Shown one piece after another: positions 3,845 through 47,315 of a stretch of DNA of 64,000 bases (its first letter is position 1; the number at the start of each line of letters is the position of its first letter). The notes below the pieces were generated by a model. That model was not told where the DNA came from. It did not search any database and saw only the letters and a program-made list of their open reading frames with translations. The DNA is taken from positions 1 through 64,000 of the IMG/VR virus record IMGVR_UViG_3300036715_003906; one strand, 5' to 3'. Made by a program: the position numbers and the translations under genes.

Positions 3845-4135
3845 ATGCGCCTGACCCGCTACCAGATTCCCAAAGCCCCGTTCTACATCCTCGGCTGGGC
3901 CGCGGACCCCAGCGCGGTCTACCGCACGAGCCGCTACATCGTCCCCGCGGCTTCGGCCGCGGAGGCAGAGAAGCTCAAGGGGGAGGTCGAGGCGGCCCTC
4001 GGGACCCACAAGGGCTCGGTCATTGTCTCGATCGAGACCGAGAAGCCCGAACTGCGCAAGGGCGTCTGGTACGCCCTGGGGATGCCCCCCGTCTTCCGCT
4101 TAGCGGTCTCGCATGGTGTACGGGAGGCCCCATGA
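3845..4135 (+). CDS. hypothetical protein
   Basis: Leaderless ATG after P5; ATGA overlap with the next gene. Confidence 0.7.
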   Translation: MRLTRYQIPKAPFYILGWAADPSAVYRTSRYIVPAASAAEAEKLKGEVEAALGTHKGSVIVSIETEKPELRKGVWYALGMPPVFRLAVSHGVREAP

Positions 4136-4635
4136 AAGAGACATGGCGCCCCATCCCGGGCATCCCGGGCTACGAAGCCAGCGACCGTGGTCGCGTGCGG
4201 TCCTGGGTCAAACGGCAGGGGGTCCGGCGAGACAGGCCCCTCCTCCGCAAGCCCGTCGAGAACAAGCAGCGAGGCTGCTACCAGCTCATGAACTTCTCGA
4301 CCCCCCGCGGCGTGGTGAGGCGCTACGTCCACCATGTCGTCCTCCGGGCCTTCGGTAAACCGGGCAGGAGGGGGCAAGAGGTCCGACACCTCGACGGCAA
4401 CAACCGCAACAACCGCCTCGACAACCTGAAATGGGGGACGCACCGGGTCAACATGCGCGACCAGGTCGCCCACGGGACCCACACGAAGGGCCACCGGAAC
4501 GGCAACGCCAAGCTCACCCCCCGGCAGGTAGCCGCCATCCGCCGGAGCCCGGCGACGGGGCGCTCTCTGGCCGAGGAGTACGGCGTCCACCCCTCGACCA
4601 TCGCCCGGGTAAAGACGGGGCAGCGGTATGTCTAA
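4132..4635 (+). CDS. NUMOD4/HNH homing endonuclease with C-terminal HTH
   Basis: ETWRPIPGIPGYEASDRGRVRS (NUMOD4), VRHLDGN..NNRLDNL.WGT..N (HNH_3), LAEEYGVHPSTI HTH. Confidence 0.9.
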   Translation: MKETWRPIPGIPGYEASDRGRVRSWVKRQGVRRDRPLLRKPVENKQRGCYQLMNFSTPRGVVRRYVHHVVLRAFGKPGRRGQEVRHLDGNNRNNRLDNLKWGTHRVNMRDQVAHGTHTKGHRNGNAKLTPRQVAAIRRSPATGRSLAEEYGVHPSTIARVKTGQRYV

Positions 4636-5479
4636 GCCCCTCTTCAAATGGGCCGGCGGCAAGACCCGGCTCCTGCCCCACCTGCTCGCGATCCTGCCCG
4701 AGCGGGTCCATGCCTACTACGAGCCCTTCCTCGGGGGCGCGGCCGTGTTCTTCGCCCTCCAGCGGGAAGGTCGGTTCGAGCGCGCCCACCTCTCCGACAA
4801 GAACCCGGTGCTCACGAGCTTTTACAGCGTCATCCGGGGCGCCCCCGCGATGTTCTCGTCCCGGCTCGCCGCCCTCCTGCCCGCCTACCAGGAGAACCCC
4901 GAGGCGACCTTCCTCGCCTGGCGGGAGCGGTTCAACCGCAGGGACACGGACGCCATCACGCAGGCCGCCCTCTTCCTGGCCCTCAACAAGTCCTGCTTCA
5001 ATGGGCTCTACCGGGTCAACCGCTACGGACGCTTCAATGTCCCCTGGGGCAAGGAGCCCGTCCTGTCCCTCCCGACGGCGGAGGAAGTCGAGGCGGCCGG
5101 CCGGGCCCTCCTCGACGTGGGGATCGGGAACCTGGACTTCGAGGCGGCCACCAAGGACGCGGCCCCCGGCTCCCTCGTCTACCTCGACCCGCCCTACGTC
5201 CCCGCCAGCGACACGGCAGACTTCGTGGGCTACGCGGCCGGGGGCTTCGGTCTCGACGAGCACAAGAGGGTCGCCCGGGTCGCCCGGGAGCTTGCCCACC
5301 GGGGGGTGCAGGTCGTCGCGTCCAACGCCGACGTCCCCCTGGTCCGTGAGCTGTACGAGGGCTTCACCTTCACCCCCCTCTCTGTCCAGCGCTCAATCAG
5401 CGCCCGGGCCGGGAGCCGCGTCACCGTCGGGGAGGTCATCCTCACGAGCTACCCCACGAAGTGCGCCCGCGCGGTGTAG
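4628..5479 (+). CDS. dam: Dam-family (D12 class) DNA adenine methyltransferase
   Basis: KWAGGK, YEPFLGGAAVF, FNGLYRVN..G.FNVPWG, YLDPPY. Confidence 0.92.
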   Translation: MSKPLFKWAGGKTRLLPHLLAILPERVHAYYEPFLGGAAVFFALQREGRFERAHLSDKNPVLTSFYSVIRGAPAMFSSRLAALLPAYQENPEATFLAWRERFNRRDTDAITQAALFLALNKSCFNGLYRVNRYGRFNVPWGKEPVLSLPTAEEVEAAGRALLDVGIGNLDFEAATKDAAPGSLVYLDPPYVPASDTADFVGYAAGGFGLDEHKRVARVARELAHRGVQVVASNADVPLVRELYEGFTFTPLSVQRSISARAGSRVTVGEVILTSYPTKCARAV

Positions 5480-5491
5480 CCGGGGGGGGGC

Positions 5492-5881
5492 AGGGGACAA
5501 TCCACGCTCACCTGCGCTATGAGCGGGCTCGCCATCGAGCCCGGCTGCCAGGTCAGGTTCTACTTCCTGACCCAGAACATCTACGGCAACGACCTCGGCC
5601 CCGTCACCTACGGGGCCTGGGCTCCCCGGTCCCTCCCTTTTCGGGTCCGCTACCGGGGCTACGGGGACATCGAGGCGCCCGAGCCCGAGGATGAACGGAT
5701 CGCCAAGGTCGCGGCGGAGTGCTTTGACCTCGACATCCTCTCCCGGGGCTGGGGGGAGAACACGGTTCACGACGTGCCGACCCGCAAGGGCAGGATCCTG
5801 CCCCAGCTCGTCGAGGCTGCCTGGAACGCCTCCAGGTTCACGAGTTTGAGCACGGCCCGCTGCGCCGCTGGCCCCCCGTGA
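5492..5881 (+). CDS. hypothetical phage protein (start reads AGG; ATG at 5519 is internal)
   Basis: GGTGTA at 5473-5478 followed by in-frame AGG-GQSTLTCAMSGLAI. Confidence 0.5.
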   Translation, partial: RGQSTLTCAMSGLAIEPGCQVRFYFLTQNIYGNDLGPVTYGAWAPRSLPFRVRYRGYGDIEAPEPEDERIAKVAAECFDLDILSRGWGENTVHDVPTRKGRILPQLVEAAWNASRFTSLSTARCAAGPP

Positions 5882-6675
5882 TCGTGCCGAAGGGTGTCCC
5901 GACCCTGGCCCGCCTCCACAAGCACCTTGCCCCCCACGCGGCCGAATACGGGGGGCTCGGGGAGTCCCCGGGCTACCTGCTCCGCCGGGAGGGCTACGGC
6001 CACTACAGCGTCTCCTGGGCGGGCGGGGAGGGCGGGGAGGACGGCGCGGATAGGGAGCACCTCGCCCGCTTCCTGGCGGCGCTCCGCTTCGAGTACGATG
6101 TCGAGCCCGAGCAGACCGGCCCGGACTCGGGCAAGCTCCATGTGGGGCCCCGGCAGGGCATCTCGGCGCACCTGCCGCCGATCCGCTCCCCCTTCCTGTC
6201 CGTGTCCTTCGCCCTCGTCCGGGAGGACATCTGGCAGGCGCTCACGACGGGGCCCACCTACCTCGGGGTGACCATGAACGACTTCCTGAACGACGTGCGG
6301 ACCTTCGCCCGCGCGATCCGGGAGACGGGCCCGGGCGCGGTCCCCTACTACCGCGATTCCTTCGCCTGGACCGGCCCGGCGTCCCAGGTTTACAGCCACG
6401 ACACGGTCGACAGGGCCGTCGGGCTGGCGACGCACTTCCACCGACTCTGCCTGAGCACCCCCGAGGCCGAGGAGGAAGGGCTCCTCCGGGTCGCGGCCGA
6501 GACCGCCCTCCTCTGGCGCGGGTTCCTGTCCGCTCGCCGCCTGTGGCCCCCCAGCTCCGCGGTCGCGGCCCGCGGGTCCGGCCAGCGGCTCGTCGAGTTC
6601 GACTACCTCGACCGCATCCACCGGGTCGCGGGGGCCAGGCGGGATGCCGAGGTCAAGGTCAGGGTGCAGCCGTGA
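5878..6675 (+). CDS. hypothetical protein (possibly the 3' part of the preceding gene)
   Basis: 265-aa ORF with GC3-rich codon usage; GTGA overlap. Confidence 0.55.
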   Translation: MIVPKGVPTLARLHKHLAPHAAEYGGLGESPGYLLRREGYGHYSVSWAGGEGGEDGADREHLARFLAALRFEYDVEPEQTGPDSGKLHVGPRQGISAHLPPIRSPFLSVSFALVREDIWQALTTGPTYLGVTMNDFLNDVRTFARAIRETGPGAVPYYRDSFAWTGPASQVYSHDTVDRAVGLATHFHRLCLSTPEAEEEGLLRVAAETALLWRGFLSARRLWPPSSAVAARGSGQRLVEFDYLDRIHRVAGARRDAEVKVRVQP

Positions 6676-6838
6676 TCACCTTCCGCGCGAGGTATCACCA
6701 GGACTTCCAGGGTGTGATCTTCGACAGGGGCCAGGTCGTCTGGGTCGCCGGAGCCGTGGAAGCCGTCTTCACCGCGGACACCTTCCTGGATGCTCGCCAG
6801 AGGGTCCTCCGCGGGATGGAACGGATCTGGGGTGATCG

Positions 6839-9745: not shown

Positions 9746-9780
9746 ACCGGTGTAGGGGGGGAGGATGGAGAACAACAACC

Positions 9781-10455
9781 ATGGGCCAGCGTAAGCCTCG
9801 CCTGCCCCGCAAGGTCACCCCGGATGAGATCTTCGAGACGTATGGAGTCGAGGCCCTGGCGCTGGCCCGAACCCACAAGGGACCCGGCCGGGTCGGGGTG
9901 GAGGGGACGCTCGACCACGGCTACCTCCAGATGAAGCTCGTGCCCGAGGCGTCGCTCCTCTCGGTCAAGGGGATTCGGGCGCGCATTCCCGTGATCGACG
10001 AGGGAGGGGTCATCTTCGCGATCCGCGCGGGACTACGGGCCACCTGCGTCCTGCTGAGGGACCCGAGGCGCGTCGACCTCGACGACCTGGCCGACCAGTA
10101 CGAGGAAGAAGCGCGGCTCGTCCTCGCCCGGTACAAGGAGCGCACGGCGGTCTGCATCTACATCCGCGAGAACGGCATCATCGAGGTCCGTGCCATGCCC
10201 GAGAAGGATTCCCTCTGGTTCTTCCACAAGGAGTCTCCACACCCGGCGCTGGCGCTCATGATCTTCGTCCTGCCTGACTGGGCCGTGGCCTACACCTTCC
10301 GCATCTCCGCCGAGGTCACCGAGGAGGCCCCGCCCCTGACCCCGGCGGAGGTCATCGCTCACAAATCATGGGGCGGTGTGCGCAGGGATCAGGTGAAGGA
10401 GTTATCGATCTTCCCGTTGTCGAGAAAATCGTCCTCAAGCCCAGGGACGAGGTAG
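9781..10455 (+). CDS. hypothetical protein
   Basis: ATG 9781 with purine-rich leader, downstream of GGTGTA at 9749. Confidence 0.6.
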   Translation: MGQRKPRLPRKVTPDEIFETYGVEALALARTHKGPGRVGVEGTLDHGYLQMKLVPEASLLSVKGIRARIPVIDEGGVIFAIRAGLRATCVLLRDPRRVDLDDLADQYEEEARLVLARYKERTAVCIYIRENGIIEVRAMPEKDSLWFFHKESPHPALALMIFVLPDWAVAYTFRISAEVTEEAPPLTPAEVIAHKSWGGVRRDQVKELSIFPLSRKSSSSPGTR

Positions 10456-16556: not shown

Positions 16557-16870
16557 GGACTCACCCTGGGGAGCAGCTCCTCGGGGTGGAATCCCTCCAG
16601 AAACCGCACGATGCGGTCCCGGCTCTTCTCCGGCAGGGAGTCCGCCACCTCGGTCATGGCCTTCTCGGTCGCCTGTCGCAGAACGGCCATGAGGTCGTCC
16701 CGACTCTGGCTCTGCCGTGCCTGGTTCCACTGATCTTCCAGCCTCCCCGTCAACCCCTGCTCGATGGTGAGGAGGCCCTTGCCCACGTCGTCTTCGCGTC
16801 CTGCCATGACGGCTGCGCGGACCTTGCTCTTCATCAGGCGGTAGGCCGCCTCGTAGATTGTCTGTTTCAT
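16553..16870 (-). CDS. hypothetical protein
   Basis: Leaderless ATG after P8. Confidence 0.65.
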   Translation of the reverse strand: MKQTIYEAAYRLMKSKVRAAVMAGREDDVGKGLLTIEQGLTGRLEDQWNQARQSQSRDDLMAVLRQATEKAMTEVADSLPEKSRDRIVRFLEGFHPEELLPRVSP

Positions 16871-16904
16871 GGGGGATACTACACCTGACATGCCTTGAAA
16901 TCAA
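16871..16904 (-). promoter_or_regulatory. hybrid class I/II promoter (P8)
   Basis: TTGATT-17nt(ending GGTG)-TAGTAT-ccccc-ATG; canonical TAnnnT. Confidence 0.8.
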
Positions 16905-18442: not shown

Positions 18443-18835
18443 TCACTGCGCGAAGGGGGGGTTGCCGCGGAAGATGGCATAGAAGGGGTCCGCCAGCGGG
18501 GAGTGGTGCCGGTTGAGCGCCGTCTGGGTCGCGTCGTCCTGCTGCTCCGTCGGCAGACGCTGGATGGTCTGGGCCAGCTCCCGCAGCCGGGGGTTGGTCG
18601 TCACACGCAGGAGGTCCGCCCGGGCCTTGTCGTCCCGTTCAAGGACCGTGATGACCTGCTCCTCCGTCAGCGTGTCGAGCTGGCAGACGCCGACGACCCC
18701 GGGAGACTCCCGCTCGATCCACACGTTGTTGGTCGTGTCCCCGTCGCACAACGTACAGGTGGGAGGCGGGCAGCCGTACCCGGGCGGGAAGTGCGGGTTG
18801 CAGGTACAGGGGGTCTGGTTGCACGGACAGGGCAT
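18443..18835 (-). CDS. Cys/Pro-rich hypothetical protein
   Basis: GAGG SD; CPCNQTPCTC...C..CTLC N-terminus. Confidence 0.6.
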   Translation of the reverse strand: MPCPCNQTPCTCNPHFPPGYGCPPPTCTLCDGDTTNNVWIERESPGVVGVCQLDTLTEEQVITVLERDDKARADLLRVTTNPRLRELAQTIQRLPTEQQDDATQTALNRHHSPLADPFYAIFRGNPPFAQ

Positions 18836-18836: not shown

Positions 18837-19085
18837 TTACCTCACGAGCCAGTCGGTCCGGTACACCACCGTGACCTCATGTTCCTGACTGGCACACCGG
18901 AGGTGAACCCGCCAGTAATGGTGCGGGGCCCTCCGGCGGAGAAGGTGCTTCTGGATGAGGAGCGGAGACCCGCACGGGCACCGTGCTTCGGCCAGGTGGG
19001 CCCTGACGTCTTCCGGGCCGGCCGCGGGGATCGCAGCGGCAACCTGGTCGTCCGTGAGGTCGGGGGAGTCTTCGAGGTTCGTCAT
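18837..19085 (-). CDS. small Zn-binding hypothetical protein
   Basis: CPCG ... C..xH; ATGA coupling. Confidence 0.5.
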   Translation of the reverse strand: MTNLEDSPDLTDDQVAAAIPAAGPEDVRAHLAEARCPCGSPLLIQKHLLRRRAPHHYWRVHLRCASQEHEVTVVYRTDWLVR

Positions 19086-20425: not shown

Positions 20426-20461
20426 GCCCCCCTACTACACCTCCCCGGGGGGCAGAATCAA
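20426..20461 (-). promoter_or_regulatory. hybrid class I/II promoter (P9)
   Basis: TTGATT-18nt(ending GGTG)-TAGTAG-gggggc-ATG; the TGA in TTTGA is the upstream gene's stop. Confidence 0.7.
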
Positions 20462-23410: not shown

Positions 23411-23440
23411 AGTGCTACACCCGAGGACCTTCGGAATCAA
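23411..23440 (-). promoter_or_regulatory. hybrid class I/II promoter (P10), leadered
   Basis: TTGATT-17nt(ending GGTG)-TAGCAC, then AGAAAGG SD-like sequence before the lipoprotein. Confidence 0.7.
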
Positions 23441-24724: not shown

Positions 24725-25039
24725 TTACACCGCGAGCGTCTTGCCGTCCGTGCCCCAGAGGCGTCCGTTGTAGGACACCTTCCCCACGATGACGCCGTCC
24801 CGGCGTCTCCGCCGGGACTCGGGGCCCCAGTTGCCGCTGCCCAGCCCGTGGATGTCGAGGAAGCTCCGCACCACGCGGGAGGCTTGCTCGGGGCTGTCCA
24901 CGGCCCGCCAGGTCTCGGGCAGGCCCATGTTGCCGTACTGGCCGAGGTCGGGGTTCGGGTAGACCTTGAAGAACACCTCCCACCCCTTCACGGGGACCGA
25001 GGCGGGGGCGGGGGATTCCGGAGCGATCTTGCGTGCCAT
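24725..25039 (-). CDS. hypothetical protein
   Basis: Leaderless ATG after P11; NPD.GQ...GSGNW...SYNGR.W motif seen in phage/plasmid proteins. Confidence 0.7.
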   Translation of the reverse strand: MARKIAPESPAPASVPVKGWEVFFKVYPNPDLGQYGNMGLPETWRAVDSPEQASRVVRSFLDIHGLGSGNWGPESRRRRRDGVIVGKVSYNGRLWGTDGKTLAV

Positions 25040-26810: not shown

Positions 26811-27065
26811 TCAGCCGGCGCGGCTCCTTCGACGGTCCATGGACTCGACCGCCGCCACGCAGACGGCGGCGATCTGGATGACCCGCCGCCGGGGGGACTG
26901 GCGGCCTTCGAGGAGGCTCTCCGCCAGCTTCCCCATCTGGACGCTCAGGATGAAGTGCCAGTCCTTCGGGTCGTGGATGTCGTCGTGGGTCGCGCCCCCC
27001 CACTCGACCGTCTGCCGGTCCATCTCCGCCTTGATCTCGTCGAACACCGTGGGCATCTCGCTCAT
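26811..27065 (-). CDS. MazG-like all-alpha NTP pyrophosphatase (small)
   Basis: EMDRQ..EWG...W..IL..GK.AE...IQIAAVCVAAVES; own GGTGTA 9 nt before ATG 27065; ORF track fuses it to an upstream gene starting at 27368. Confidence 0.55.
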   Translation of the reverse strand: MSEMPTVFDEIKAEMDRQTVEWGGATHDDIHDPKDWHFILSVQMGKLAESLLEGRQSPRRRVIQIAAVCVAAVESMDRRRSRAG

Positions 27066-27377
27066 GGCCGCCGGTACACCAAGACGGACCCTGAGCTGGG
27101 CCAGGTCGGCTTCGGGCTGCCCGAGGTGACTCTCGGCCTCCCTGAGCAGCTCGGCCGCCACCTGGGGCGGCACCGTGTCAAAGGGCCCCTCGTGCCCGGC
27201 CCACGCCCGCAGCCCCTGGGGGCCGCAGTGGAGCGTGTGACGGATCCACTCCTCGTCGATGTCCACCAGGCTCGTGTCGGAGGCGACAGGGTCGAACCCC
27301 TCGTAGCGCTCCTCGATCGCCCCGAGCATCCCCGCGTCTCCCTGCCGTGTCCAGAATCTGTCCCCCATGGCCCAGGG

Positions 27378-28085
27378 TTACACCGCGAGTTGGGCCCGGG
27401 CAAAGGCACGGGCGAAGCCCTCGGGGGTCACCGACCGCACCTCCTTCGTCCGTTCGCTTTTGCCCCCCAGGGCCATCAGCCACGACCCCTGCGCCGTCGT
27501 GCGGACCAGGGGCACGGGGCGCTTCTCGGGCGGCTGGAAGCACCCCCAGAGCACGGTCCGCTTCGTGTAGGCGTTCGCCCGCTTGACGAGCCCGACGTCC
27601 TCCGATGTCATCTGGTCGTGAGGCGTCGCCCCCAGCACGGCGAGCCGGTCCCGCTCCTCCTCCGTCACGTCCGTCCAGCCCCCGAACTCCCAGGGGTCAA
27701 AGGTGAGCTTCTTCTCCCCGATCTCCGGAGCCAGGCGGGGCAGCCTGCCGATCGGGTTCTCGACGGCCCAGAAGTCAGGCTGGAGGAAGTCCACGGTACG
27801 GAGCACCTGGTAGACCAGCTCGACCGCCCGTGCCGTGGTCCCGTCCTGATCCTTCCTTGCCCAGTGCCCGGCCCCGCTCCGGGAGAAGTCCGTGCAAGGG
27901 GGCGCGGCGAGGAGGCCGTCGATCGTCGGGTACTGCTGGAGGAGCCCTTCCAGAAACCATCGGGCCGACAGCTCCCGGACGTCGTCGCCGAGCTTCAAGT
28001 CCATCTGGACGACGTTCCACCCTGCCTGCTCGAAGGGGAGGCACCAGGCCCCCGAGTGGTCGAAGAGGGACAGGACCGTCTTCAT
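27378..28085 (-). CDS. DNA (cytosine-5)-methyltransferase-like protein (compact phage type)
   Basis: VLSLFD.SG (motif I), AAPPCTDFS (motif IV), VENP (motif VI), YTKRT.LW, RS.TP.GFA. Confidence 0.8.
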   Translation of the reverse strand: MKTVLSLFDHSGAWCLPFEQAGWNVVQMDLKLGDDVRELSARWFLEGLLQQYPTIDGLLAAPPCTDFSRSGAGHWARKDQDGTTARAVELVYQVLRTVDFLQPDFWAVENPIGRLPRLAPEIGEKKLTFDPWEFGGWTDVTEEERDRLAVLGATPHDQMTSEDVGLVKRANAYTKRTVLWGCFQPPEKRPVPLVRTTAQGSWLMALGGKSERTKEVRSVTPEGFARAFARAQLAV

Positions 28086-28285
28086 GCCACCTCGCGCGGC
28101 CGGTAGGCCCCGCACGAGGGGCAGTCCGCCCCCCCGTAGACGTGGCCCTCGCCGCAGCGGGAGCAGCGCTGGGCAGCGAGCCACTCGGACCTCTCCCTCT
28201 GCGTCCGCCGCTTGTTCTTGTACACGGTCCGCTTGGGCCGCTTGCGCCCCCCCGTTGGCCTTGCGCATGCCCCCCGGCTACACCG

Positions 28286-28477: not shown

Positions 28478-28803
28478 GCGGGCTCCGGGGCGGGGCTGGG
28501 GACCACCACGAAGTGCAGGAGCTTCCCGTCGTCGTCGTACTCCCCCGCGATGCGGTAGCCGGGGGACAGGATGCCGAGGAGCCCGTTGACGACGCCCAGC
28601 GTGCCGAGGAGCGGGCCCCGCGGCCCCTCCATGAGCACCACGGTCGGGTGGTCGAGGAGCGCCGACCCTTCCTCCACCCCCACCCGGTTCTCGACCATCT
28701 TCTCGATCGCCTCGGGCTCCGCCTCCCGGATCTCTTCGAGCAGTCGCCAGGCCGCGTACACGGCCCCCATCTCGGGGGCCGGCGTCACGTAGATGTGTTT
28801 CAT
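28474..28803 (-). CDS. hypothetical protein
   Basis: GGTGTA-10nt-ATG; L..HPTV...G.LGV.NG motif of a phage family. Confidence 0.6.
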   Translation of the reverse strand: MKHIYVTPAPEMGAVYAAWRLLEEIREAEPEAIEKMVENRVGVEEGSALLDHPTVVLMEGPRGPLLGTLGVVNGLLGILSPGYRIAGEYDDDGKLLHFVVVPSPAPEPA

Positions 28804-29499
28804 CCCCCCGCCCTACACCGCTTCGATCTCGGCCACATCGTCGATCCGCACCCGGGGCCCCGTAGGAAGGGCCGCCTCCCCCGGAGGCTGGACCGCAAGA
28901 TCGATCCGTCCTCGTCGAGCGGCGGGGGGTGGAAGGGGCCGAGCGGTCGCCCTTTTGCGACGGAGGCCCCGCTGCGGCCCGGGAGCACCTCCTGGAGCGA
29001 CTCCGCCCCTGGGCCCGGATGCTCGCCCTCCGGTTCGGGGCCCCGGTCTATCTCGTCGGCTCGGCTCTTGAGCTTGTCGACCCCCGGGACGTAGACGTCC
29101 GTGTCCTCGTCCGCGAGGAGGACTTCAAGGCTAGGTACGGCGATCCGGAAGAGTGGCGCCGGGCCCAGGGGTGGCCCGGCCCTCCTCCTTGACATGATCC
29201 ATGAGCCGCGAGACCAGGCGGAAGGCGGTGACGTGGATGTCTTCGATCGGCTTCGGGGTGAGCGTCATCCCCCAGGGCTACACCGCGAAGTCCGCTCCCT
29301 TCGGCGTCTTCCCGGACGTTCTGGAGGACGCCCCCGACGAGGTCCGCGTAGAGCACGGGCCCGAACCAGGCCACGTCGTTGAGCGGCATCCGCCGGCCCT
29401 CCCAGGGCACGATGTGGAGGTAGCCCCCGAGGGCCCGCAGCCGCACCACGGCCTCCTCGACGTGCAGGCCGTTCAGGCCGGCCAGGAACTCGGGGGGCA

Positions 29500-31323: not shown

Positions 31324-31495
31324 GGGGAGCCGGATACACCGGCCGTTTCTCGGCGCGCTTCTCCTTGGTCTCCGCGGCCGAGAGGCACCGTCGGACCACC
31401 TCGGAGAACGAGACCCCGAGCTTCTCCGCTTGCTTCTCCGCCCAGGCCACATTCGGCCCGGAGAGCGCCACGGAGACCTTCTTCACTTTCTTCAT
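31187..31495 (-). CDS. ribbon-helix-helix (CopG-like) DNA-binding protein
   Basis: KVSVALS...W.EKQAEKLGVSFSEVVRRCL. Confidence 0.6.
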   Translation of the reverse strand: MKKVKKVSVALSGPNVAWAEKQAEKLGVSFSEVVRRCLSAAETKEKRAEKRPVYPAPHDGNQAGSLPPLPGAQILGPGGGDQHDERRERRERREDGRLRQGG

Positions 31496-32054: not shown

Positions 32055-32270
32055 TTACACCGGGAAGAAGCCCTCCAGCACGTCGAAGGCCGCGAGTTCC
32101 TCGGCCGTGGCCTTCCGTACCTTCCCGGCGTCGACCATCCCCGCCACCATCTCATCCACCTGCGCGATCGACAGGCAGGAGCCGAGGTGCATCGTCAGCG
32201 GCCCGAGGAGCGTGGGCCGCGGGGCCCGACTCCTCATGTACTCCGCGATCTCCGCCCGAACGTCCTTCAT
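32055..32270 (-). CDS. small hypothetical protein
   Basis: ATGA coupling; ends PV* within a GGTGTAA element. Confidence 0.5.
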   Translation of the reverse strand: MKDVRAEIAEYMRSRAPRPTLLGPLTMHLGSCLSIAQVDEMVAGMVDAGKVRKATAEELAAFDVLEGFFPV

Positions 32271-32504
32271 GACTCGCTCCCGTGAGGACGTCGCCCGCCT
32301 CGAGCAGCACCTGATCGTCCACCAGGACGGGGGTGTGGTCGTCGAGCGCCGTACACCTGCGGATCACTACACCCCTGGCCTCCAGCTCACCCCGGAAGCC
32401 GTCGATGTCCCCCGTCGTGGTCGTGAAGACGTTGAGCCCCCGGTCGAGCAAGACGCGGCGATGGGCCACCATCTCGGGGGCCCAGACCTCGATCGAGTAG
32501 TGCC

Positions 32505-35780: not shown

Positions 35781-35823
35781 GACGGTCCTTACACCACCCG
35801 GGGAACGGGCAGTGGAGCTAACG

Positions 35824-36314: not shown

Positions 36315-36503
36315 TCAGACAGACTTCTCGTGGACCGTGTCGGGGCGGTTGTCGGGCAGGCTCTCGTCCGACATCTGCTTCCCGATGCTGTTGGTGACCT
36401 TGTACACGGCATCGCAAAGGTGCTGACCGCGGTCAACGACCTCGGTGATCACCGTGCCATCCTTCTTGATCCGCATCACGAACTTCATCGACTCGTTGCT
36501 CAT
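36315..36503 (-). CDS. DUF2997-like small protein
   Basis: RIKKDGTV..EV...G..C...T..IG pattern; position next to DUF1257 and Ycf46. Confidence 0.65.
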   Translation of the reverse strand: MSNESMKFVMRIKKDGTVITEVVDRGQHLCDAVYKVTNSIGKQMSDESLPDNRPDTVHEKSV

Positions 36504-37117
36504 GGCTTCGTTTCCCTTCCCCCTCCTGGTACACCGCCCAGCCGGACCTTCGCCCCCGGCGTGACCACCAGACCCCCCGCGGGACGCGGAATCACGGGCC
36601 CCGCCCACGGATCGGAGACCGGCGTTGCGGGACGCCCTTGCAGCATCCGTCCCCCCTGGTTCGGGGCGTTGGCCCCGTAAAGAGGGGGAGAAAGCGCAGG
36701 GGATTCCGTCTGGAACCCTTCCGGACGTGGAGCGGGAGTCGCCTCGGGGGACGTGGGCGATTCTTCCGCCGGTTCCTTGTCCGCCGGCATGACCGGGGGA
36801 CGCTCCGGGACCGTGGGGGTCTCGTGGGGGTCCGTCCAGTCCGTCCGTATCTCCGGGGTACGCCCCACCTCGATGTGGGCGAAAGATTGCCGGGTCACCG
36901 CCCCGAAGCGGGGGTCCTCCGGGCGAAGGAGGGGGACCTCCGTGAAGAGGCGCTGCTCCCAGGTCGCGGCCCGGACGTCCATCTGCATCTTGCCGTGAAG
37001 GCTCCGGGTGCAGTCCGGGTTCAAGCACCTGGCGCACCAGGCCCGACTGAAATCGGCGAGGGGCTGGCCCTTGTTGTTGCAGCTCCCGACCCAGTCCTTG
37101 CGCGCCATCCCCGCCAT
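36500..37117 (-). CDS. hypothetical protein with Cys-rich N-terminus and Pro-rich tail
   Basis: C...WCARC.NP.C.RS. Confidence 0.6.
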   Translation of the reverse strand: MAGMARKDWVGSCNNKGQPLADFSRAWCARCLNPDCTRSLHGKMQMDVRAATWEQRLFTEVPLLRPEDPRFGAVTRQSFAHIEVGRTPEIRTDWTDPHETPTVPERPPVMPADKEPAEESPTSPEATPAPRPEGFQTESPALSPPLYGANAPNQGGRMLQGRPATPVSDPWAGPVIPRPAGGLVVTPGAKVRLGGVPGGGRETKP

Positions 37118-40100: not shown

Positions 40101-40262
40101 TCCCGGCGGGGCGCCGGGGAGGGGCAACACCCCCTGCGGAGAGAGGGGTAGGACGCCGTCCGCCTCATCGACGAGGGCCTCGTCCCGGGCGATGTTTTCG
40201 TCCTCGTCCTCGACTTCGATCCGGTAGGTGATGTCGTCATCCTCGTCCTCAAGCTGCACCAT
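37146..40262 (-). CDS. polA: family A DNA polymerase with 3'-5' exonuclease
   Basis: ExoI ALDIESEG, ExoIII YACSDA, TGRFS, motif A CDYAGEELR, motif B RKAGKMANFALVYG, NYPIQGTGAD, motif C VHDEL; SD GGAGG at ATG 40262. Confidence 0.93.
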   Translation of the reverse strand: MVQLEDEDDDITYRIEVEDEDENIARDEALVDEADGVLPLSPQGVLPLPGAPPGQAPPPAVELTADSFLRPEDFGRNVTVDDLVRPEDMVALPPRQRRLDGDTDADDPLASMAIMGVAAERHVPLMTKPWMKHHTFHLLKTPEEVEDLIGRAIANGRCALDIESEGLDTRIYPDPVTGALRTVHQVVGFCIAYGDAKDGYYIPIRHRPEDGGPDLNIKPVDRVLAAIAKLCRAAQPEPFPEEADILSFKRHKTPPRVVIDFWHAAFDQEMLYPITGIDWWHPDSFEDGQLAFYMVYSDDKRLSLKEKAPQYLRDPEGHPYEMIKFDALFARGRAPRFETLSPDEPSIVNYACSDAICTRLLCAHPEGVPQVVASGSRHAWMYRVEKQVVQAKRVMERNRVKVDRPRAKELLAQAEEERDRIRGQIIALAESKGFPNFEPNSPAQLGTFLFDARGLDISPKPERNKASGQYKTDKVTIDELATKLGENAPPALKWIIAYRKQEKLIGTYLLAMAHNGDANDEFRFQFKQTGAATGRFSAPQGDPEQGFGGLAIHGIPGTSNLRTCFVAREGYVMVKCDYAGEELRVVTNLSGEKVWIKEFTEGEGDLHAITARAFFPGYDTEKDKEKKKGYRKAGKMANFALVYGGGAASVQRAVGCDKLEARRKKDAFDKALPTFAQWVKRKHDRVKLDKGVYTAFGRWISIPDAAIKEGEYAYHDRFTRKKPLDQETAQATRAACERHSTNYPIQGTGADIMKIAMVLIHKQCWKRGWLKNGSDSVRMLLTVHDELVFEIKPEVLLVAIEVITWTMESLGRMTTPEWGVPLVTDPLVGSNWGAETTARRAKVSKAGEREKAGPGEVHSGAFLFVKPPDWLRQTLDKWGPEWRDDLTEPYPNGEVPAAPSPAEAPGNVSVAEEGEGEDTLSMESPSDDPVPAAPPPPPAPAPAPQPAPVPAPRPPTPAPTPPAGQVLTVRLKETTRRAIPRIAGLCTEFKKEDGALLRVITASGEVLIDPILNIRVDPQPFMFALNQGNWSNGAHSLE

Positions 40263-40695
40263 CGCTGTCCTCCTTGACCACGAGCACGTATACACCGCTC
40301 CGCCAGTACGACAGGAGCAAGTATCCCAGGAAAAGTGCTGCTTCGCCCTCCTGCCCGCCGGGCCGGTAGCAGGTGGGCATCTTGCTCGACAGGGGCGTAC
40401 AGCGCCCCTTGTCGCGGAGCACGCACCCCTCTTCCTCGAGGCACCGCTGGTCGAGCAGGGGGAGCTTGCGGACCACGAGCCTCGGGGCAAGCCCCAGCTT
40501 GTCGAAAAGGGGCCGGGTCCATCCCTTGAGGGCCGCGTCCAGCTCCCCCGCCGTGAGCACGGGGACGAGCTGCCCCATGTCCGAGCCCTGGAGGGGGGCC
40601 CACTCGGGCTCCCATGTCCCCGCCTTGTCCGCGTGGATGAGAAAGGCGTCGATGACGCCCATCTCCCGCACCTTGATCTTCAGCTCGCGCGGCAC
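40249..40695 (-). CDS. hypothetical protein (Cys cluster)
   Basis: C....C.....C......P.C; lies between the primase Zn-finger and the polymerase. Confidence 0.6.
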   Translation of the reverse strand: MPRELKIKVREMGVIDAFLIHADKAGTWEPEWAPLQGSDMGQLVPVLTAGELDAALKGWTRPLFDKLGLAPRLVVRKLPLLDQRCLEEEGCVLRDKGRCTPLSSKMPTCYRPGGQEGEAALFLGYLLLSYWRSGVYVLVVKEDSDGAA

Positions 40696-43737: not shown

Positions 43738-45475
43738 GTTTCTTGGCCCCCTCTTGCATCTTCCGCACGAGGTCCTTGGTCGAGCTGCCCTTGGTGTCGA
43801 AGGTGAGGGCCCCCACGGCCGACTCCCCGAGTACCTGGTCGATGATCGCCTTCTTCCCTTCGAGGGTTTCGAGCACGTAGTCGTCGATCGTCTTGCGCTC
43901 CTTGGCCGTCTCCCCCGGTAGCTCGCTCACCAGGTGGTAGACGAGGATACGCGTGTGCTTCGACCCGAGCCGCTGGGGCCGGCCGAGCGTCTGGACGTAG
44001 TTCCCCCACGACCAGGGGGCGTCGAAGAACAGGAGGGCCGAGGCGGCTTGCAGGTTGATCGCCTCCGACCCCGCGTCGGTGATGAAGATCACCTTCGTCG
44101 GGCTGTTCTCGTCCTGGAAGGCGTCCTGAGCCGCCTTGCGTTGCTGGACCTTCTCCTTGCCCGTGATGCGGACCGAGGTGATCCCGCCCGCCGTCAGGAT
44201 GGCCTGGAGCCGGCCCACCAGCGACTCGAACCGCGTGTAGACAACGACCTTCTCGCCGTCGAGTTCCTCGGTCAAGATGTCCATCAGGAGCCGCTCCTTC
44301 GACCCGAGCTTGTCGACCTTGATCGCCTCCTCCGCAAAGGCCGAGCTGACCTCGTCCGCCTCCTTGTACTTGAGCAGCGTGAGGGAGTTGACGACGAGCT
44401 GGCAGTAGATGAGCGCCGTGAGCGCCTTGGTCTCCTCGTAGTCCTTGACCGTCCCGTCCCCGAGTTCGAGGACCCCCGACACCGCCTCCCGGTACTTCGC
44501 CACCTCCGCCGGCAGGAGCGTCGTCGTCATCCGCCGCGTCGTGAGCACCGGTAGCTCGTCCGACACCACGGTCTTCGGGCGGCCGAGGAAATAAGGGTCG
44601 ATCATCTGCCGGAAAAGGCTGAGGTTCCGGTAGCCCACGACCAGGGGGATGCGCCGGCCCCCGGGCATCACCTGCTCACGCACCACGCAGAAGGAGTCGT
44701 GAAATGCCTTCTTGGTCGCGAAGAGCCAGGGCACGACCGCCTTGTAGATCGAGAAACCCTCCACCAGATTGTTCTTCAGGAGCGTCGCCGTCAGGCCGTA
44801 GCAGCGGTTCGATCGGGCCGAGAGCGCCTGGACCACCGTCCACGTCTTCGTCGCCGTGTTCTTGAACGCCGTGGCCTCGTCGAAGATGGTCAGGACGCTG
44901 GTCATCTCCCGCGTGATCCCGTCGAGGAGCCCGGGGATGAAGATCGGCTTCTCGCCCCGCTTCGTGGCCTTGATCATCCCGCTGCCCGCGGTCCAGTCCC
45001 GCAGGAGCTGGCTGTACGTCATCAGCAGGAGCGGCTTGTCCGGCCCCGCGTAGGCTTTCCAGGCGTGGTAGATGGTCTTCCGCTCGTCCGGACCGCCCCC
45101 GACCACGAACACCTTGACCCCCTTCGTAAACCGCAGGATCTCGCTCTCCCACTGGAGCTGCGGGGCCACGGGCGAGACCACGATGGGCCGCGTCCCGGGC
45201 TCCCGCTGCCAGAGGTAGCAAAGGGCCGCCACGGCCTGGAGGGTCTTGCCCAGGCCCGTCCCGTCGCCGAGGATCATCCGAGGCATCCGCATCAGGTGGT
45301 AGACCCCGATCGTCTGATAGTACCTGAGCCGGAGCGGGACCGGCCCCGTCGGCGTGTCCAGCGTGTCCCGCAAATGAGGGGTGGGTTTCAGGGCCACCGT
45401 TTTCGAGTCCCGGATGCGTAGGAGGTCGTGGTAGGTGGCGGTGATCTCGGCTTGGGCCGCGGCCGGAAGGGGCAT
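43730..45475 (-). CDS. SNF2-family (SF2) helicase
   Basis: LGDGTGLGKT, IFDEA, LTATLLKN, KVVVYT, AGSEAINLQAA, QTLGRPQRLG; GGTG-TAAAGT-7nt-ATG. Confidence 0.9.
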   Translation of the reverse strand: MPLPAAAQAEITATYHDLLRIRDSKTVALKPTPHLRDTLDTPTGPVPLRLRYYQTIGVYHLMRMPRMILGDGTGLGKTLQAVAALCYLWQREPGTRPIVVSPVAPQLQWESEILRFTKGVKVFVVGGGPDERKTIYHAWKAYAGPDKPLLLMTYSQLLRDWTAGSGMIKATKRGEKPIFIPGLLDGITREMTSVLTIFDEATAFKNTATKTWTVVQALSARSNRCYGLTATLLKNNLVEGFSIYKAVVPWLFATKKAFHDSFCVVREQVMPGGRRIPLVVGYRNLSLFRQMIDPYFLGRPKTVVSDELPVLTTRRMTTTLLPAEVAKYREAVSGVLELGDGTVKDYEETKALTALIYCQLVVNSLTLLKYKEADEVSSAFAEEAIKVDKLGSKERLLMDILTEELDGEKVVVYTRFESLVGRLQAILTAGGITSVRITGKEKVQQRKAAQDAFQDENSPTKVIFITDAGSEAINLQAASALLFFDAPWSWGNYVQTLGRPQRLGSKHTRILVYHLVSELPGETAKERKTIDDYVLETLEGKKAIIDQVLGESAVGALTFDTKGSSTKDLVRKMQEGAKKHG

Positions 45476-45519
45476 GGCGGGCACTTTACACCGGACCGGA
45501 GGAATCGACCGGCCGCCTT

Positions 45520-45552
45520 TTGATTCTCGTCCGAGCCCCGCGTAGTACCCCC
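45520..45552 (+). promoter_or_regulatory. class I promoter cassette (P12), divergent from the SNF2 promoter
   Basis: AATCGAC upstream; TTGATT-17nt-TAGTAC-cccc-AGG. Confidence 0.8.
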
Positions 45553-45681: not shown

Positions 45682-45722
45682 CCTGTCAGGAGGGGGGCCC
45701 ATCCCCCCTCTAGGAGACCATC

Positions 45723-46346: not shown

Positions 46347-46351
46347 GGGTT

Positions 46352-46384
46352 TTGCTTCCCGGGGGTCTGCCGCGTAGTACCCCC
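46352..46384 (+). promoter_or_regulatory. class I promoter cassette (P13)
   Basis: TTGCTT-17nt-TAGTAC-cccc-ATG. Confidence 0.8.
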
Positions 46385-46758
46385 ATGAAAACCCTGACAT
46401 CCGAGACGGCAACACCATCCACTCTGTCGAGGGCGAGGTGCTCCACGACGGCCGCATCCTCGTCACCTACCGGGGCCTCGACGCCTACACGGGAGAGGCA
46501 ACCCCCCTCTTTTTCGAGGCACACTTCAAGGGCAACGTCACCGCCCCCGTCGCCTTCTTCCGGGCCATGAGCCAGATGCAGGCAGACAACAAGCACCGCC
46601 TCGTCGAGATGTTCACGACGAGCGCGAAGTGGCACGTCCAGATGGGCGTCGGGCCCGACGGCCGCCCCTGCAACGAGAAGCCCGCCCCCCGGGCCAGCCG
46701 ACCCCTCGACATCCCGCGCGAGTCGAGGTGGTTCAACTTATCGGCGGGCGCTGTTTGA
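46385..46758 (+). CDS. hypothetical protein with a 1-nt frameshift near 46398
   Basis: MKTL(T) joins IRDGNTIHSVEGEVLHDG... if one base is restored; stop TGA lies within P14. Confidence 0.6.
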
Positions 46759-46787
46759 TTCCTGGGGGGTCTCTGCGTAGTACCCCC
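46755..46787 (+). promoter_or_regulatory. class I promoter cassette (P14)
   Basis: TTGATT-17nt-TAGTAC-cccc-ATG. Confidence 0.85.
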
Positions 46788-47105
46788 ATGTCCACCGACC
46801 GCCGCTTCATCACCCGCTTCTCCCTCCTCGCGTCGACCATGGAGGTGCTCGTCGATACCGACTACGAGGGCCGCCTCGTCTTCGAGGCGAGCCTCCGTGA
46901 CGAGGGACAGGAGAGCGCGTACTACGTCCTCAGGGCCACCCGGTCCGTCGTCAGCAAGAACACGGACCGGCTCGCCGACGCCGTGATCCGAGCCCTGCTC
47001 GGGACGACCTGCGTGGTCGACGTGGTCGAGCTGTTCAAGGGCTCGGACCTGTGGATGGTGAGCGAGCACGACCAGGAAGCCCTGAACTACTACGCGGGCA
47101 TCTGA
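46788..47105 (+). CDS. hypothetical protein
   Basis: Leaderless ATG after P14. Confidence 0.7.
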   Translation: MSTDRRFITRFSLLASTMEVLVDTDYEGRLVFEASLRDEGQESAYYVLRATRSVVSKNTDRLADAVIRALLGTTCVVDVVELFKGSDLWMVSEHDQEALNYYAGI

Positions 47106-47126
47106 AAGAATCGTACAGGGGGGCGT

Positions 47127-47159
47127 TTGATTCCTCGGGGGGTGCTGCGTAGTGCCCCC
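47127..47159 (+). promoter_or_regulatory. class I promoter cassette (P15)
   Basis: TTGATT-17nt-TAGTGC-cccc-ATG. Confidence 0.8.
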
Positions 47160-47315
47160 ATGAACGCCGCCGCCTACCGCTCGAACGACGACACCGCCCT
47201 GCTGCCCGAGGACGAGGCCCCCCGCACGCTGCCGCGAACAGCCGTTCAACCTGTGCCCCGTGGGGGCGCGGCTCCTGACCGTGGCTGTGGCCGGGGCCGT
47301 GGTGTAGTCCGTGGC

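What the first reader, a model, noticed from the sequence alone, without database searches (positions are those of the whole stretch)
4115..47306. Second promoter class, GGTGTA, in front of DNA-metabolism genes
Seen directly: GGTGTA lies 9-13 nt before the start at 1226(-), 4115, 5473, 24726(-, clpX), 27075(-), 27379(-), 28279(-), 28814(-), 29279(-), 31335(-), 32056(-), 35790(-, AAA), 45487(-, SNF2) and 47301. It lies further upstream, with an SD, at 9749, 18862(-), 36530(-) and 40291(-, polA). No TTGA -35 was evident for these copies, while P8, P9 and P10 combine both classes. Four upstream proteins end in Val-stop (GTG-TAA/TAG) because the element overlaps their stop codon: dam, 24725, 27378 and 32055. 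Inference: a 'middle' promoter with an extended -10, read by a phage sigma or by modified host RNA polymerase, again mostly leaderless.
Basis: partly seen in the sequence, partly recalled or inferred. Interest (0 to 1): 0.6.

Follow-up and report, generated by a model that had tools for sequence, protein, structure and literature searches.

The report
Huge-phage promoter motif for leaderless genes
A seven-base signal, YGGTGTA, sits about ten bases before the start codon of replication-type genes in this giant virus of bacteria and all its known relatives; it is very probably a virus-specific promoter that makes messenger RNAs with no leader, most likely read by a sigma factor the virus encodes.

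Summary
GGTGTA occurs 28 times in the window against 9.4 expected. Fifteen copies have an ATG 9-13 nt downstream against 1.2 expected (P 9e-14). In the whole 251-kb phage record the figures are 41 of 110 against 5 (P 1e-26), peaking at 10 nt. Two listed sites fail: 1226(-) and 5473.

The motif is really YGGTGTA. It is the only conserved block upstream of orthologous genes. It is the top or near-top upstream hexamer in relatives of 48-68% GC, and ten related huge-phage records show the same motif-to-ATG spacing.

Close copies lack a Shine-Dalgarno (8%), while distant copies have one (65%). The base before the ATG is a pyrimidine, and gene interiors avoid the motif on both strands. It therefore acts as a promoter giving leaderless mRNAs.

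It has no -35 and no conserved T at -7, and its TG abuts the TA, so it is not a canonical extended -10. No phage RNA polymerase was found, even in a complete relative. The clade conserves two adjacent ECF-like sigma proteins that are not themselves under the motif.

Best reading: a phage sigma plus host core, as with phiEco32 gp36 and its AATGTA element. Timing and transcription start sites remain untested because no RNA data exist.

The parts
4115..4120 (+). YGGTGTA copy (T before it). ATG at 4132 (N11) opens an HNH endonuclease, 4132-4635.
9749..9754 (+). Copy with a leader. ATG at 9781 (N26), with GGAG in the leader.
18862..18867 (-). Copy with a leader. ATG at 18835 (N26), with GAGG six nt before the ATG.
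24726..24731 (-). Copy overlapping the GTG-TAA end of the upstream ORF. ATG at 24712 (N13) opens clpX.
27075..27080 (-). Copy followed at N9 by ATG 27065, an in-frame internal ATG of the ORF 26811-27368. It is a possible internal promoter or a chance copy.
27379..27384 (-). Copy overlapping a GTG-TAA stop. ATG at 27368 (N10) opens a 185-aa ORF.
28279..28284 (-). Copy followed by ATG at 28268 (N10), which opens a C5 DNA methylase-like protein of 296 aa.
28814..28819 (-). Copy followed by ATG at 28803 (N10), which opens a 109-aa ORF.
29279..29284 (-). Copy followed by ATG at 29268 (N10). The ORF has only 45 codons and a weak coding score, so this site is uncertain.
31335..31340 (-). Copy followed by ATG at 31323 (N11), which opens a 218-aa protein (DUF1653).
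32056..32061 (-). Copy overlapping a GTG-TAA stop. ATG at 32046 (N9) opens a 5'-deoxynucleotidase (NT5C).
35790..35795 (-). Copy followed by ATG at 35780 (N9), which opens an AAA ATPase. The motif is the only conserved block in the alignment of this upstream region across 7 phage records.
35827..35853 (-). Intrinsic-terminator-like hairpin (11 pairs, then TTTTCGTT) about 30 nt upstream of the 35795 copy. If it terminates, the AAA gene needs fresh initiation.
36530..36535 (-). Copy with a leader. ATG at 36503 (N26).
40291..40296 (-). Copy 28 nt before the polA ATG (40262), with AGGAGG in the leader. It is read as Gly-Val in the upstream ORF, whose ..W-R-x-G-V-Y-V.. end is conserved in relatives. 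A coding constraint therefore cannot be separated from promoter function.
45487..45492 (-). Copy followed by ATG at 45475 (N11), which opens an SNF2 helicase.
47301..47306 (+). Copy followed by ATG at 47316 (N9), which opens a 236-aa ORF.
5473..5478 (+). Copy overlapping the GTG-TAG end of dam. The next ATG is 40 nt away (5519). It is not a close copy and its function is uncertain.
16880..16885 (-). Hybrid site: TTGATT, a 17-nt spacer ending in GGTG, TAGTAT, then ATG at 16870 (N9). The base before the motif is A, so it is not the Y form. It looks like the class-1 type.
20436..20441 (-). Hybrid site: TTGATT, an 18-nt spacer, TAGTAG, then ATG at 20425 (N10), which opens a DUF1848 protein. The base before the motif is A.
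23416..23421 (-). Hybrid site: TTGATT, a 17-nt spacer, TAGCAC, then GTG at 23396 (N19). The base before the motif is G.
1226..1231 (-). It lies in codons 2-4 of a small ORF that starts at 1236 by a GTGA overlap.

Best explanation
**What it is.** YGGTGTA is a strand-specific promoter element shared by a clade of uncultivated huge phages. The window is the first 64 kb of one of them, a 251-kb record of 68% GC.

**Geometry.** The TA of the motif lies 10 +/- 1 nt before the ATG. Transcription should therefore begin at the A of the start codon, or at most 1-3 nt before it, which gives leaderless mRNAs. Where the motif lies 20 nt or more upstream, the transcript has a short leader with its own Shine-Dalgarno.

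**Who reads it.** The element has no -35 partner and no conserved T at -7. I infer that it is a single-element promoter read by host core RNA polymerase carrying a phage-encoded, ECF-like sigma. The candidates are two adjacent genes at G000:218828-219679(-) (283 aa) and G000:217944-218804(-) (286 aa). In this genome they sit behind a different promoter type, of the -35/-10 kind.

**Regulon.** The genes served are replication, recombination, nucleotide-metabolism, DNA-modification and chaperone genes.

**Shown versus inferred.**
- Shown: position, strand bias, conservation, the split between close copies without SD and distant copies with SD, and the sigma folds.
For: **Position**
- The spacing peak is at N10 in G000.
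- The complete relative G005 gives N9 21 and N10 26, against a background of about 3.5.

**Clade-wide conservation**
- GGTGTA-N9-11-ATG counts against the reversed-pattern control are 77/3, 62/3, 127/6, 2/0 and 55/8 in G001-G005.
- In G006-G011 they are 60/4, 47/0, 25/2, 51/3, 38/9 and 9/2. The distant polA outgroup G012 gives 0/0.
- GGTGTA is the top upstream hexamer in G001, G003 and G005 and the sixth in G000.
- The other upstream motifs differ between genomes: TTGATTCC in G000, GTTGATCC in G001, none in G003 or G005.

**Transcription rather than translation**
- In the alignment of the AAA-gene upstream regions the motif is the only conserved block. Its distance to the ATG runs from N9 to N27 among orthologs, and an SD appears when it is far.
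- SD-like words occur in 18 of 213 close copies against 31 of 48 distant copies (Fisher P 8e-16).
- ATG is the start in 90% of motif-led genes against 73% of other genes.
- The base before the ATG is a pyrimidine in 69-84% of motif-led starts.
- Against synonymous-codon shuffles, gene interiors are depleted on the sense strand in G000 and G005 and on the antisense strand in G000, G003 and G005.
- A strong terminator-like hairpin precedes the 35795 copy.

- No RNA polymerase was found in G000, G001, G003 or the complete, terminally repeated G005. PF00562 and the D[FY]DGD pattern found nothing in any of them. PF00623 was searched in G000 only. The PF00940 search is uninformative because its control rang nowhere.
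- The 286-aa protein hits Pfam Sigma70_r2 at 27.7 bits against a cut-off of 24. Residues 51-157 of its model align to ECF sigma2 domains with Z 6-7.9 and rmsd 2.5-3.5 A over 75-87 residues.
- For the model of the 283-aa protein, 19 of the top 21 matches among 48,161 chains are sigma factors, with Z up to 7.8. They include T4 gp55 and phiEco32 gp36.
- The gene pair is present in every sufficiently complete relative.
- In most relatives no GGTGTA lies upstream of the pair, while in several of them the next gene downstream has one.

**Precedent**
- phiEco32 middle and late promoters are a single AATGTA centred at -11.5, read by the sigma gp36 (PMC12276001).
- The M. tuberculosis sigma-L -10 element is T-G-N-C/A (PMC6372665).
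Against: - No transcript data exist, so neither the TSS nor the timing has been observed.
- With the TSS at the A of the ATG, the TA falls at -12/-11. That is exactly where the primary sigma reads the TANNNT element of leaderless genes in Deinococcus-Thermus (PMC12340547).
- In the AT-richer relative G005 the motif continues as TA(A/G)TA(T/A), which looks like a primary-sigma hexamer.
- A few copies carry TTGA at a 17-18 nt spacer.
- The structural Z scores are middling (below 8) and the Foldseek E-values are not significant.
- In G001 and G007 a GGTGTA lies 42 nt upstream of the sigma pair.
- All motif-bearing records belong to one clade, so the co-occurrence of motif and sigma is a single evolutionary event, not repeated evidence.
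- The host is unknown.
Confidence: 0.6

Rival explanations
1. The host primary sigma reads the motif as an atypical -35-independent promoter. TA would be -12/-11, and the upstream GGTG would act like an extended -10. This could follow a phage factor disabling -35 recognition, as gp39 of Thermus phage P23-45 or AsiA of T4 do.
For: - The geometry matches primary-sigma leaderless promoters, where TANNNT lies 6-7 bp before the ORF (PMC12340547). Here the hexamer end lies 5-7 nt before the ATG.
- G005 shows a TAATAT-like continuation.
- Hybrid copies with TTGATT occur at a 17-18 nt spacer.
- Thermus phage late genes use extended -10 promoters after gp39 remodels sigma region 4 (PMC4124052).
Against: - T at -7 is not conserved in G000, G001 or G003, and the TG abuts the TA instead of leaving one base.
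- The motif is invariant across phages of 48-68% GC, while their other promoter motifs differ.
- This reading leaves the two conserved phage sigmas without any conserved abundant target motif.
- The three hybrids lack the pyrimidine before the motif.
Confidence: 0.25
2. The motif acts in the RNA. It could be an unusual ribosome-binding or translation-enhancer sequence, or the cleavage site of an RNase that trims transcripts to near-leaderless form.
For: - It lies at a fixed short distance before start codons.
- GGUG can pair with four bases of the 16S 3' end (established anti-SD sequence).
- Many copies lie inside tight gene arrays and overlap stop codons.
Against: - GGTG ends 12 nt before the ATG, which is too far for that part of the anti-SD.
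- The distance varies from N9 to N27 among orthologs, and a separate SD appears when it is far.
- The antisense strand of genes also avoids the motif.
- A terminator-like hairpin sits just upstream of one copy.
- Back-to-back divergent copies occur in short intergenic gaps.
Confidence: 0.05
3. An unrecognised phage-encoded RNA polymerase, too divergent for the searches used, reads the motif.
For: - Many jumbo phages carry very divergent polymerases.
- G000 is only about 53% complete.
- The control for PF00940 rang nowhere, so that search is uninformative.
Against: - The complete relative G005, with terminal repeats, has no PF00562 match and no D[FY]DGD motif in any frame.
- The clade instead conserves sigma-like proteins, which need a cellular core enzyme.
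Confidence: 0.05
4. The pattern is chance or a codon artefact, for example Gly-Val or Val-stop codons at gene ends.
For: - Twenty-five copies in G000 are antisense TAC-ACC codon pairs, which are plainly incidental.
- The polA copy is coding Gly-Val in a conserved peptide.
Against: - Binomial P is 1e-26 in G000.
- The reversed-pattern controls are 10- to 40-fold lower in ten other records.
- A conserved pyrimidine precedes the motif.
Confidence: 0.01

Closest known systems
phiEco32 (and phage 7-11) middle and late promoters read by the phage sigma gp36
   Same: - A single conserved element ending in TGTA near -10, with no -35 consensus.
- The phage has no polymerase of its own and supplies a distant, ECF-like sigma to the host core (PMC12276001).
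- gp36 (9m7y_F) appears among the structural matches of both phage proteins, at Z 4.7 and 5.9.
   Different: - The motif is YGGTGTA, not AATGTA.
- It is centred near -13.5 if the TSS is the A of the ATG, against -11.5.
- Transcripts are mostly leaderless.
- There are two sigma-like genes, one with a roughly 100-aa insert in sigma2.
- There is no detectable sequence similarity to gp36.
- The genomes are 250-490 kb huge phages, not a 77-kb podovirus.
TANNNT -10 motif adjacent to ORFs, giving leaderless mRNAs in Deinococcus-Thermus
   Same: - TA lies at the same distance from the start codon.
- No SD is present.
- ATG is strongly preferred as the start.
- The start codon doubles as the TSS (PMC12340547).
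   Different: - That element is read by the primary sigma and needs T at -7.
- Here T at -7 is not conserved.
- The conserved bases lie upstream of the TA (YGGTG).
Extended -10 promoters of Thermus phages P23-45 and phiYS40, and T4 middle promoters after sigma region-4 remodelling
   Same: - Phage genes after the early phase are transcribed without a -35.
- The switch is away from -10/-35 promoters (PMC4124052, PMC3950348).
   Different: - The canonical TG is separated from TATAAT by one base and the hexamer is conserved.
- Here the TG abuts the TA and the hexamer is free.
- No gp39 or AsiA homolog was sought or found.
T4 late promoters (TATAAATA) read by gp55
   Same: - A single -10-type element read by a minimal phage sigma2 protein.
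- gp55 (7d7d_F) matches the 283-aa model at Z 6.6.
   Different: - The sequence is different.
- T4 late mRNAs have leaders.
- Activation by a sliding clamp was not examined here.
ECF sigma -10 elements, for example M. tuberculosis sigma-L C-G-T-G-N-C/A
   Same: The GTGT(A/C) core matches T-12, G-11, N-10 and C/A-9 of the sigma-L consensus (PMC6372665).
   Different: - ECF promoters normally need a -35 (GGAAC or TGAAC type), and none is present here.
- In the ECF register the TSS would lie about 2 nt before the ATG.

Membership tests
Canonical extended -10 promoter (TGnTATAAT) | TG at -15/-14, separated by one base from the -10 hexamer | tested here: not met
   TG is immediately followed by TA in every copy, as GGTG-TA.
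Canonical extended -10 promoter (TGnTATAAT) | Conserved -10 hexamer with A at -11 and T at -7 | tested here: not met
   TA is invariant. The position equivalent to -7 is T in only 12% of copies in G000, 30% in G001 and 26% in G003. It reaches 45% in G005.
Canonical extended -10 promoter (TGnTATAAT) | No requirement for a -35 element | tested here: met
   TTGA at the right spacing occurs in at most 5 of 55 promoter-like copies (G005), 3 of 77 (G001), 2 of 34 (G000) and about 2 of 120 (G003).
Primary-sigma leaderless promoter (TANNNT next to the ORF) | -10 motif ending 6-7 bp before the start codon, with no SD | tested here: met
   The TA+4 hexamer ends 5-7 nt before the ATG (N9-11). SD-like words occur in 8% of such genes.
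Primary-sigma leaderless promoter (TANNNT next to the ORF) | Transcripts start at the start codon | not testable with these tools
   Only DNA metagenome runs hold the phage. A pyrimidine at -1 and A at +1 are consistent with this.
Phage-sigma single-element promoters (phiEco32 gp36 type) | One conserved element near -10 containing TGTA, with no -35 | tested here: met
   comparator in PMC12276001
Phage-sigma single-element promoters (phiEco32 gp36 type) | The phage encodes a sigma-family protein and no RNA polymerase | tested here: met
   - Sigma70_r2 at 27.7 bits.
- Sigma2 structural matches at Z 6-7.9.
- No polymerase in the complete relative.
Phage-sigma single-element promoters (phiEco32 gp36 type) | The sigma is homologous to gp36 | tested here: inconclusive
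   9m7y_F matches at Z 4.7 and 5.9 only, which is no better than other sigmas. There is no sequence match.
Phage-sigma single-element promoters (phiEco32 gp36 type) | The holoenzyme with the phage sigma initiates at the motif | not testable with these tools
   This needs in vitro transcription.
Shine-Dalgarno / ribosome-binding site | Complementarity to the 16S 3' end at 5-10 nt from the start, and a fixed relation to the start codon among orthologs | tested here: not met
   Only GGTG can pair, and it ends 12 nt before the ATG. Orthologs place the motif at N9 to N27 and add a separate SD when it is far.
Sigma-70 family (for the two phage proteins) | Sigma2 fold with regions 2.1-2.4 | tested here: met
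   - For the 286-aa protein, the Pfam hit is over the cut-off, and 23 of the top 24 VIA rows are sigma2 domains, most of them ECF.
- For the 283-aa protein, 19 of the top 21 matches among 48,161 chains are sigma factors.
Sigma-70 family (for the two phage proteins) | Sigma4 domain that binds the beta flap | tested here: inconclusive
   The C-terminal helices align in order with sigma4 of SigH and SigL, but only at high rmsd. There is no Pfam region-4 hit.

The most novel reading that the evidence does not exclude
A large and so far undescribed family of phage sigma factors defines its own transcription code. The family has 270 clusters at 50% identity and is sharply separated from cellular sigmas. 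It occurs as a conserved pair, and one member has sigma2 split by an inserted HTH domain. In this reading, a single upstream-shifted element YGGTGTA drives a leaderless regulon of up to a fifth of all genes across a whole clade of huge phages, independent of host GC content. The two proteins might act together as one split or heterodimeric sigma.
Probability: 0.2. Interest if true: 0.75.

Novelty: new variant of a known kind. Interest (0 to 1): 0.55.

Why it matters
- **Gene expression in huge phages.** These phages are known almost only from metagenomes, and nothing is known about how they time their genes. A clade-wide motif with single-base positional precision gives a first map of one regulon.
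- **Annotation.** The motif corrects start codons in genomes of very high GC content, where start calling is poor.
- **Translation.** It predicts that 6-21% of genes are translated from leaderless mRNAs.
- **A testable pair.** It names the sigma-like genes together with the promoters they may read. The pair can be tested in vitro without cultivating the phage or its host.
- **Possible use.** If confirmed, the sigma and its 7-bp promoter would be a compact orthogonal expression module.

Tried and rejected
- **RNA evidence.** The one run search found 8 DNA metagenome runs (microbial mat, sediment, freshwater) and no RNA run, so no reads were laid.
- **Host.** A GroEL scan of genome contigs gave only 42-46% matches in unrelated MAGs, which says nothing about the host.
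- **Known phages.** megablast found nothing. tblastn of polA gave at best 33% identity, to an unannotated 485-kb uncultured phage.
- **Literature.** A full-text search for GGTGTA with 'promoter' and 'phage' found nothing relevant. Searches on jumbo or huge phages with 'leaderless' or 'sigma' found no description of this motif.
- **Fold searches.** Foldseek gave no significant match for either sigma model. Profile and PDB sequence searches were weak.
- **Structural genes.** PHROGs and Pfam on 20 large proteins of the 64-184 kb stretch gave almost nothing: one weak baseplate hit and several replication proteins. That 49-170 kb holds structural genes is therefore an inference.
- **Terminators before class-1 promoters.** I supposed each was preceded by a terminator hairpin. 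Mean folding energy equals that of shuffles, so I dropped the idea.
- **A third motif.** TTCTAGG occurs only twice, so I dropped it.
- **-35 in G005.** I first thought about 40% of copies carried TTGA. The exact count is 5 of 55.
- **Further loci.** The search for related loci with the 286-aa family alignment failed for lack of a conserved stretch.

Full report
**What the window is.** The window is the first 64 kb of an IMG/VR virus record, G000. The record is 251,474 bp, linear, 68% GC, and CheckV estimates it about 53% complete. It has no near relative among deposited phages. Its polA finds only huge-phage contigs of 89-407 kb at 45-58% protein identity, and an unannotated 485-kb uncultured phage. 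The DNA occurs in microbial-mat, sediment and freshwater metagenomes, and no RNA run holds it.

**The observation.** GGTGTA occurs 28 times in the window, against 9.4 +/- 2.8 in shuffles.
- The decisive test needs no gene calls. Over the whole record, the distance from the motif to the next ATG is 9 nt in 7 copies, 10 nt in 21, 11 nt in 6 and 13 nt in 6. Other offsets hold about one copy each.
- An ATG at 9-13 nt follows 15 of 28 window copies (1.2 expected, P 9e-14) and 41 of 110 genome copies (5.0 expected, P 1e-26).
- 1226(-) is not: the copy lies in the first codons of a small ORF that starts at 1236 by a GTGA overlap.
- 5473 is not: its next ATG is 40 nt away.
- 27075 precedes an in-frame internal ATG, and 29279 precedes only a 45-codon ORF.
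- The four distant sites (N26-N28), the four Val-stop overlaps and the three TTGATT hybrids are as described.

**The motif is seven bases.** The base before GGTGTA is C or T in 82-97% of promoter-like copies in four genomes, against 51-68% of other copies. It is a pyrimidine in all 17 non-hybrid promoter-like copies of the window. The three hybrids with a TTGATT -35 have A, A and G there.

**Conservation.** I fetched three relatives, two whole and one nearly so: G005 (398 kb, terminal repeats, complete, 48% GC), G003 (the first 400 kb of 407 kb, 55% GC) and G001 (350 kb, 60% GC).
- GGTGTA is the most enriched hexamer within 60 nt upstream of genes in all three: 68 against 8.2 expected, 119 against 11.1, and 65 against 8.0. 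It ranks sixth in G000, at 26 against 3.4.
- The other enriched motifs differ by genome: TTGATTCC with GCGTAGTA in G000, GTTGATCC with CTGTAGGAC in G001, and none in G003 or G005.
- The pattern GGTGTA-N9-11-ATG exceeds its reversed control by 7- to 40-fold in most of ten related records. It is absent from a distant polA outgroup.
- Upstream of the orthologous AAA ATPase gene, the motif is the only conserved block in seven records.

**It acts in transcription and yields leaderless mRNAs.**
- Among orthologs the motif lies 9-10 nt from the ATG in some genomes and 22-27 nt in others. In the latter an AGGAGG-type sequence appears between them.
- Over four genomes, SD-like words occur before 18 of 213 starts with the motif at N8-13. 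They occur before 31 of 48 starts with it at N20-53, and before about a third of all genes (P 8e-16).
- Close-motif genes start with ATG in 90% of cases, against 73% elsewhere.
- The base before their ATG is a pyrimidine in 69-84% of cases. This is the usual context of a start site, which is established knowledge of bacterial TSS selection.
- Against synonymous-codon shuffles, gene interiors are depleted of the motif. Sense-strand depletion is seen in G000 (13 against 32 +/- 4.5) and G005. Antisense depletion is seen in G000 (23 against 35 +/- 4.4), G003 and G005. G001 shows only a weak trend, and G003 shows no sense-strand depletion.
- Avoidance on the untranscribed strand is expected of a DNA signal, not of an RNA one.
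- A strong terminator-like hairpin lies 30 nt upstream of the copy at 35795.
- GGTG ends 12 nt before the ATG, which is too far for that part of the anti-SD to serve as a ribosome-binding site.

**What kind of promoter.**
- With the A of the ATG as +1, the motif occupies -17 to -11, with T at -12 and A at -11.
- That places the TA where primary-sigma leaderless promoters of Deinococcus-Thermus have it (PMC12340547).
- There is, however, no -35: TTGA at the right spacing occurs in at most 5 of 55 copies.
- T at -7 is not conserved, except partly in the AT-richer G005, and the TG abuts the TA.
- It is therefore not a canonical extended -10 promoter of the kind Thermus phages use after gp39 remodels sigma region 4 (PMC4124052).
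- The conserved core TGTA recurs in two ECF-type elements. One is AATGTA centred at -11.5, the single element of phiEco32 middle and late promoters read by the phage sigma gp36 (PMC12276001). The other is T-G-N-C/A of M. tuberculosis sigma-L (PMC6372665).

**Who reads it.**
- No RNA polymerase was detected in G000, G001, G003 or the complete G005. PF00562 and a D[FY]DGD pattern in all frames found nothing. PF00623 was searched in G000 only. The PF00940 search had no valid control.
- G000 encodes two adjacent sigma-like proteins.
- The 286-aa one passes Pfam Sigma70_r2. Its model (pLDDT 69) aligns over residues 51-157 with ECF sigma2 domains at Z 6-7.9.
- The 283-aa one is unannotated by sequence. 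An exhaustive structural comparison of its model (pLDDT 66) nevertheless returns sigma factors in 19 of the top 21 rows. Its sigma2 is split by a roughly 100-residue insert with an excisionase-like HTH.
- The pair is conserved in every relative that is complete enough.
- The 283-aa family forms 270 clusters in 1.84 billion proteins, with a sharp boundary.
- In G000 the pair sits behind a class-1 promoter.
- In most relatives no GGTGTA lies within 60-70 nt upstream of it. In three of them the methylase gene just downstream has one.
- A distant family member's contig still uses GGTGTA, at N7-N9.
- A conserved sigma pair needs a conserved abundant target, and YGGTGTA is the only one in all genomes. 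I therefore put the phage-sigma reading at about 0.6 and the primary-sigma reading at about 0.25.
- All this co-occurrence lies within one clade and counts as one event.

**Regulon.**
- In the window the motif-led genes are an HNH endonuclease, a C5 methylase, NT5C, ClpX, an AAA ATPase, PolA, an SNF2 helicase and small unknown proteins.
- Outside the window they are UvrD, RecD2, Pol III delta', GroEL, a volactin and DUF4419.
- The 49-170 kb block of large unknown proteins in long overlapping operons has only about four sense-strand promoter-like copies.
- 'Middle' timing is a reasonable inference from this and from the sigma genes lying behind another promoter type. It is not shown.

**Verdict.** The promoter and leaderless interpretation is well supported by comparative evidence. 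'Extended -10' is the wrong label. The reader of the motif is probably a phage sigma but is unproven. The kind of system is known: a phage sigma with a single-element promoter, and leaderless phage genes. This motif, its clade-wide use in huge phages and the paired divergent sigmas appear undescribed in the literature I could search.

Noticed in passing
window 988(-), 1592, 3532, 3812, 25072(-), 45520, 46755, 47127; G000 109-246 kb: A long class-1 promoter family of about 23-25 copies: GAAATCGAC, about 11 nt, TTTTGATTCC, 11-12 nt, yGCGTAGTAsCCCC, then ATG. Here the TA-to-ATG distance is 8 nt, not 10. The copies precede small ORFs that begin MTT(S/T)T... G001 has the cognate GTTGATCC...cTGTAGGACCCCCATG.
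   Followed up: partly
G000:218828-219679(-) (L001:1932-2783:-): A 283-aa protein with no sequence annotation whose model is a sigma2 domain split by a roughly 100-aa insert carrying an excisionase/MerR-like HTH. Its family has 270 clusters at 50% identity and does not merge with cellular sigmas in HMMER.
   Followed up: partly
G000:172130-173758(-) and 171431-172123(-) (L046, L013): A NusG (NGN plus KOW) domain fused to a 5'-3' exonuclease, 542 aa. It is followed by a 230-aa protein that has only sigma region 4.
   Followed up: no
G000:123158-124162(-) (L044:3158-4162:-): A volactin (PF25216, E 3e-66), an actin-like protein, in a phage and led by a YGGTGTA-N10 promoter.
   Followed up: no
window 32352-32373(-): Two GGTGTA copies 16 nt apart with no start codon nearby and no pyrimidine before them. 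They lie about 76-100 nt upstream of the ATG at 32270.
   Followed up: no
window 40249-40296(-): The ORF upstream of polA ends ..W-R-S-G-V-Y-V.. and overlaps the polA start by 14 nt. The Gly-Val codons GGT-GTA are rare T/A-ending codons in a genome whose third positions are about 90% G+C. The same six bases stand there in relatives.
   Followed up: partly
window 49812-62288(-): Two giant ORFs of 1438 and 2503 aa have no Pfam or PHROG match. They head a roughly 120-kb one-strand block of large unknown proteins, presumably virion genes.
   Followed up: partly
G000:248354-248375 and 222669-222682: Back-to-back divergent GGTGTA copies lie 10 bp apart or overlapping, serving genes on both strands. 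Several such pairs also occur in G005 and G009.
   Followed up: no
L104 (JGI 3300063038 contig, 54% GC): In a contig carrying a distant member of the sigma family, GGTGTA precedes ATGs at 7-9 nt rather than 9-11 nt. This is a possible spacing variant that could be used to test covariation.
   Followed up: no
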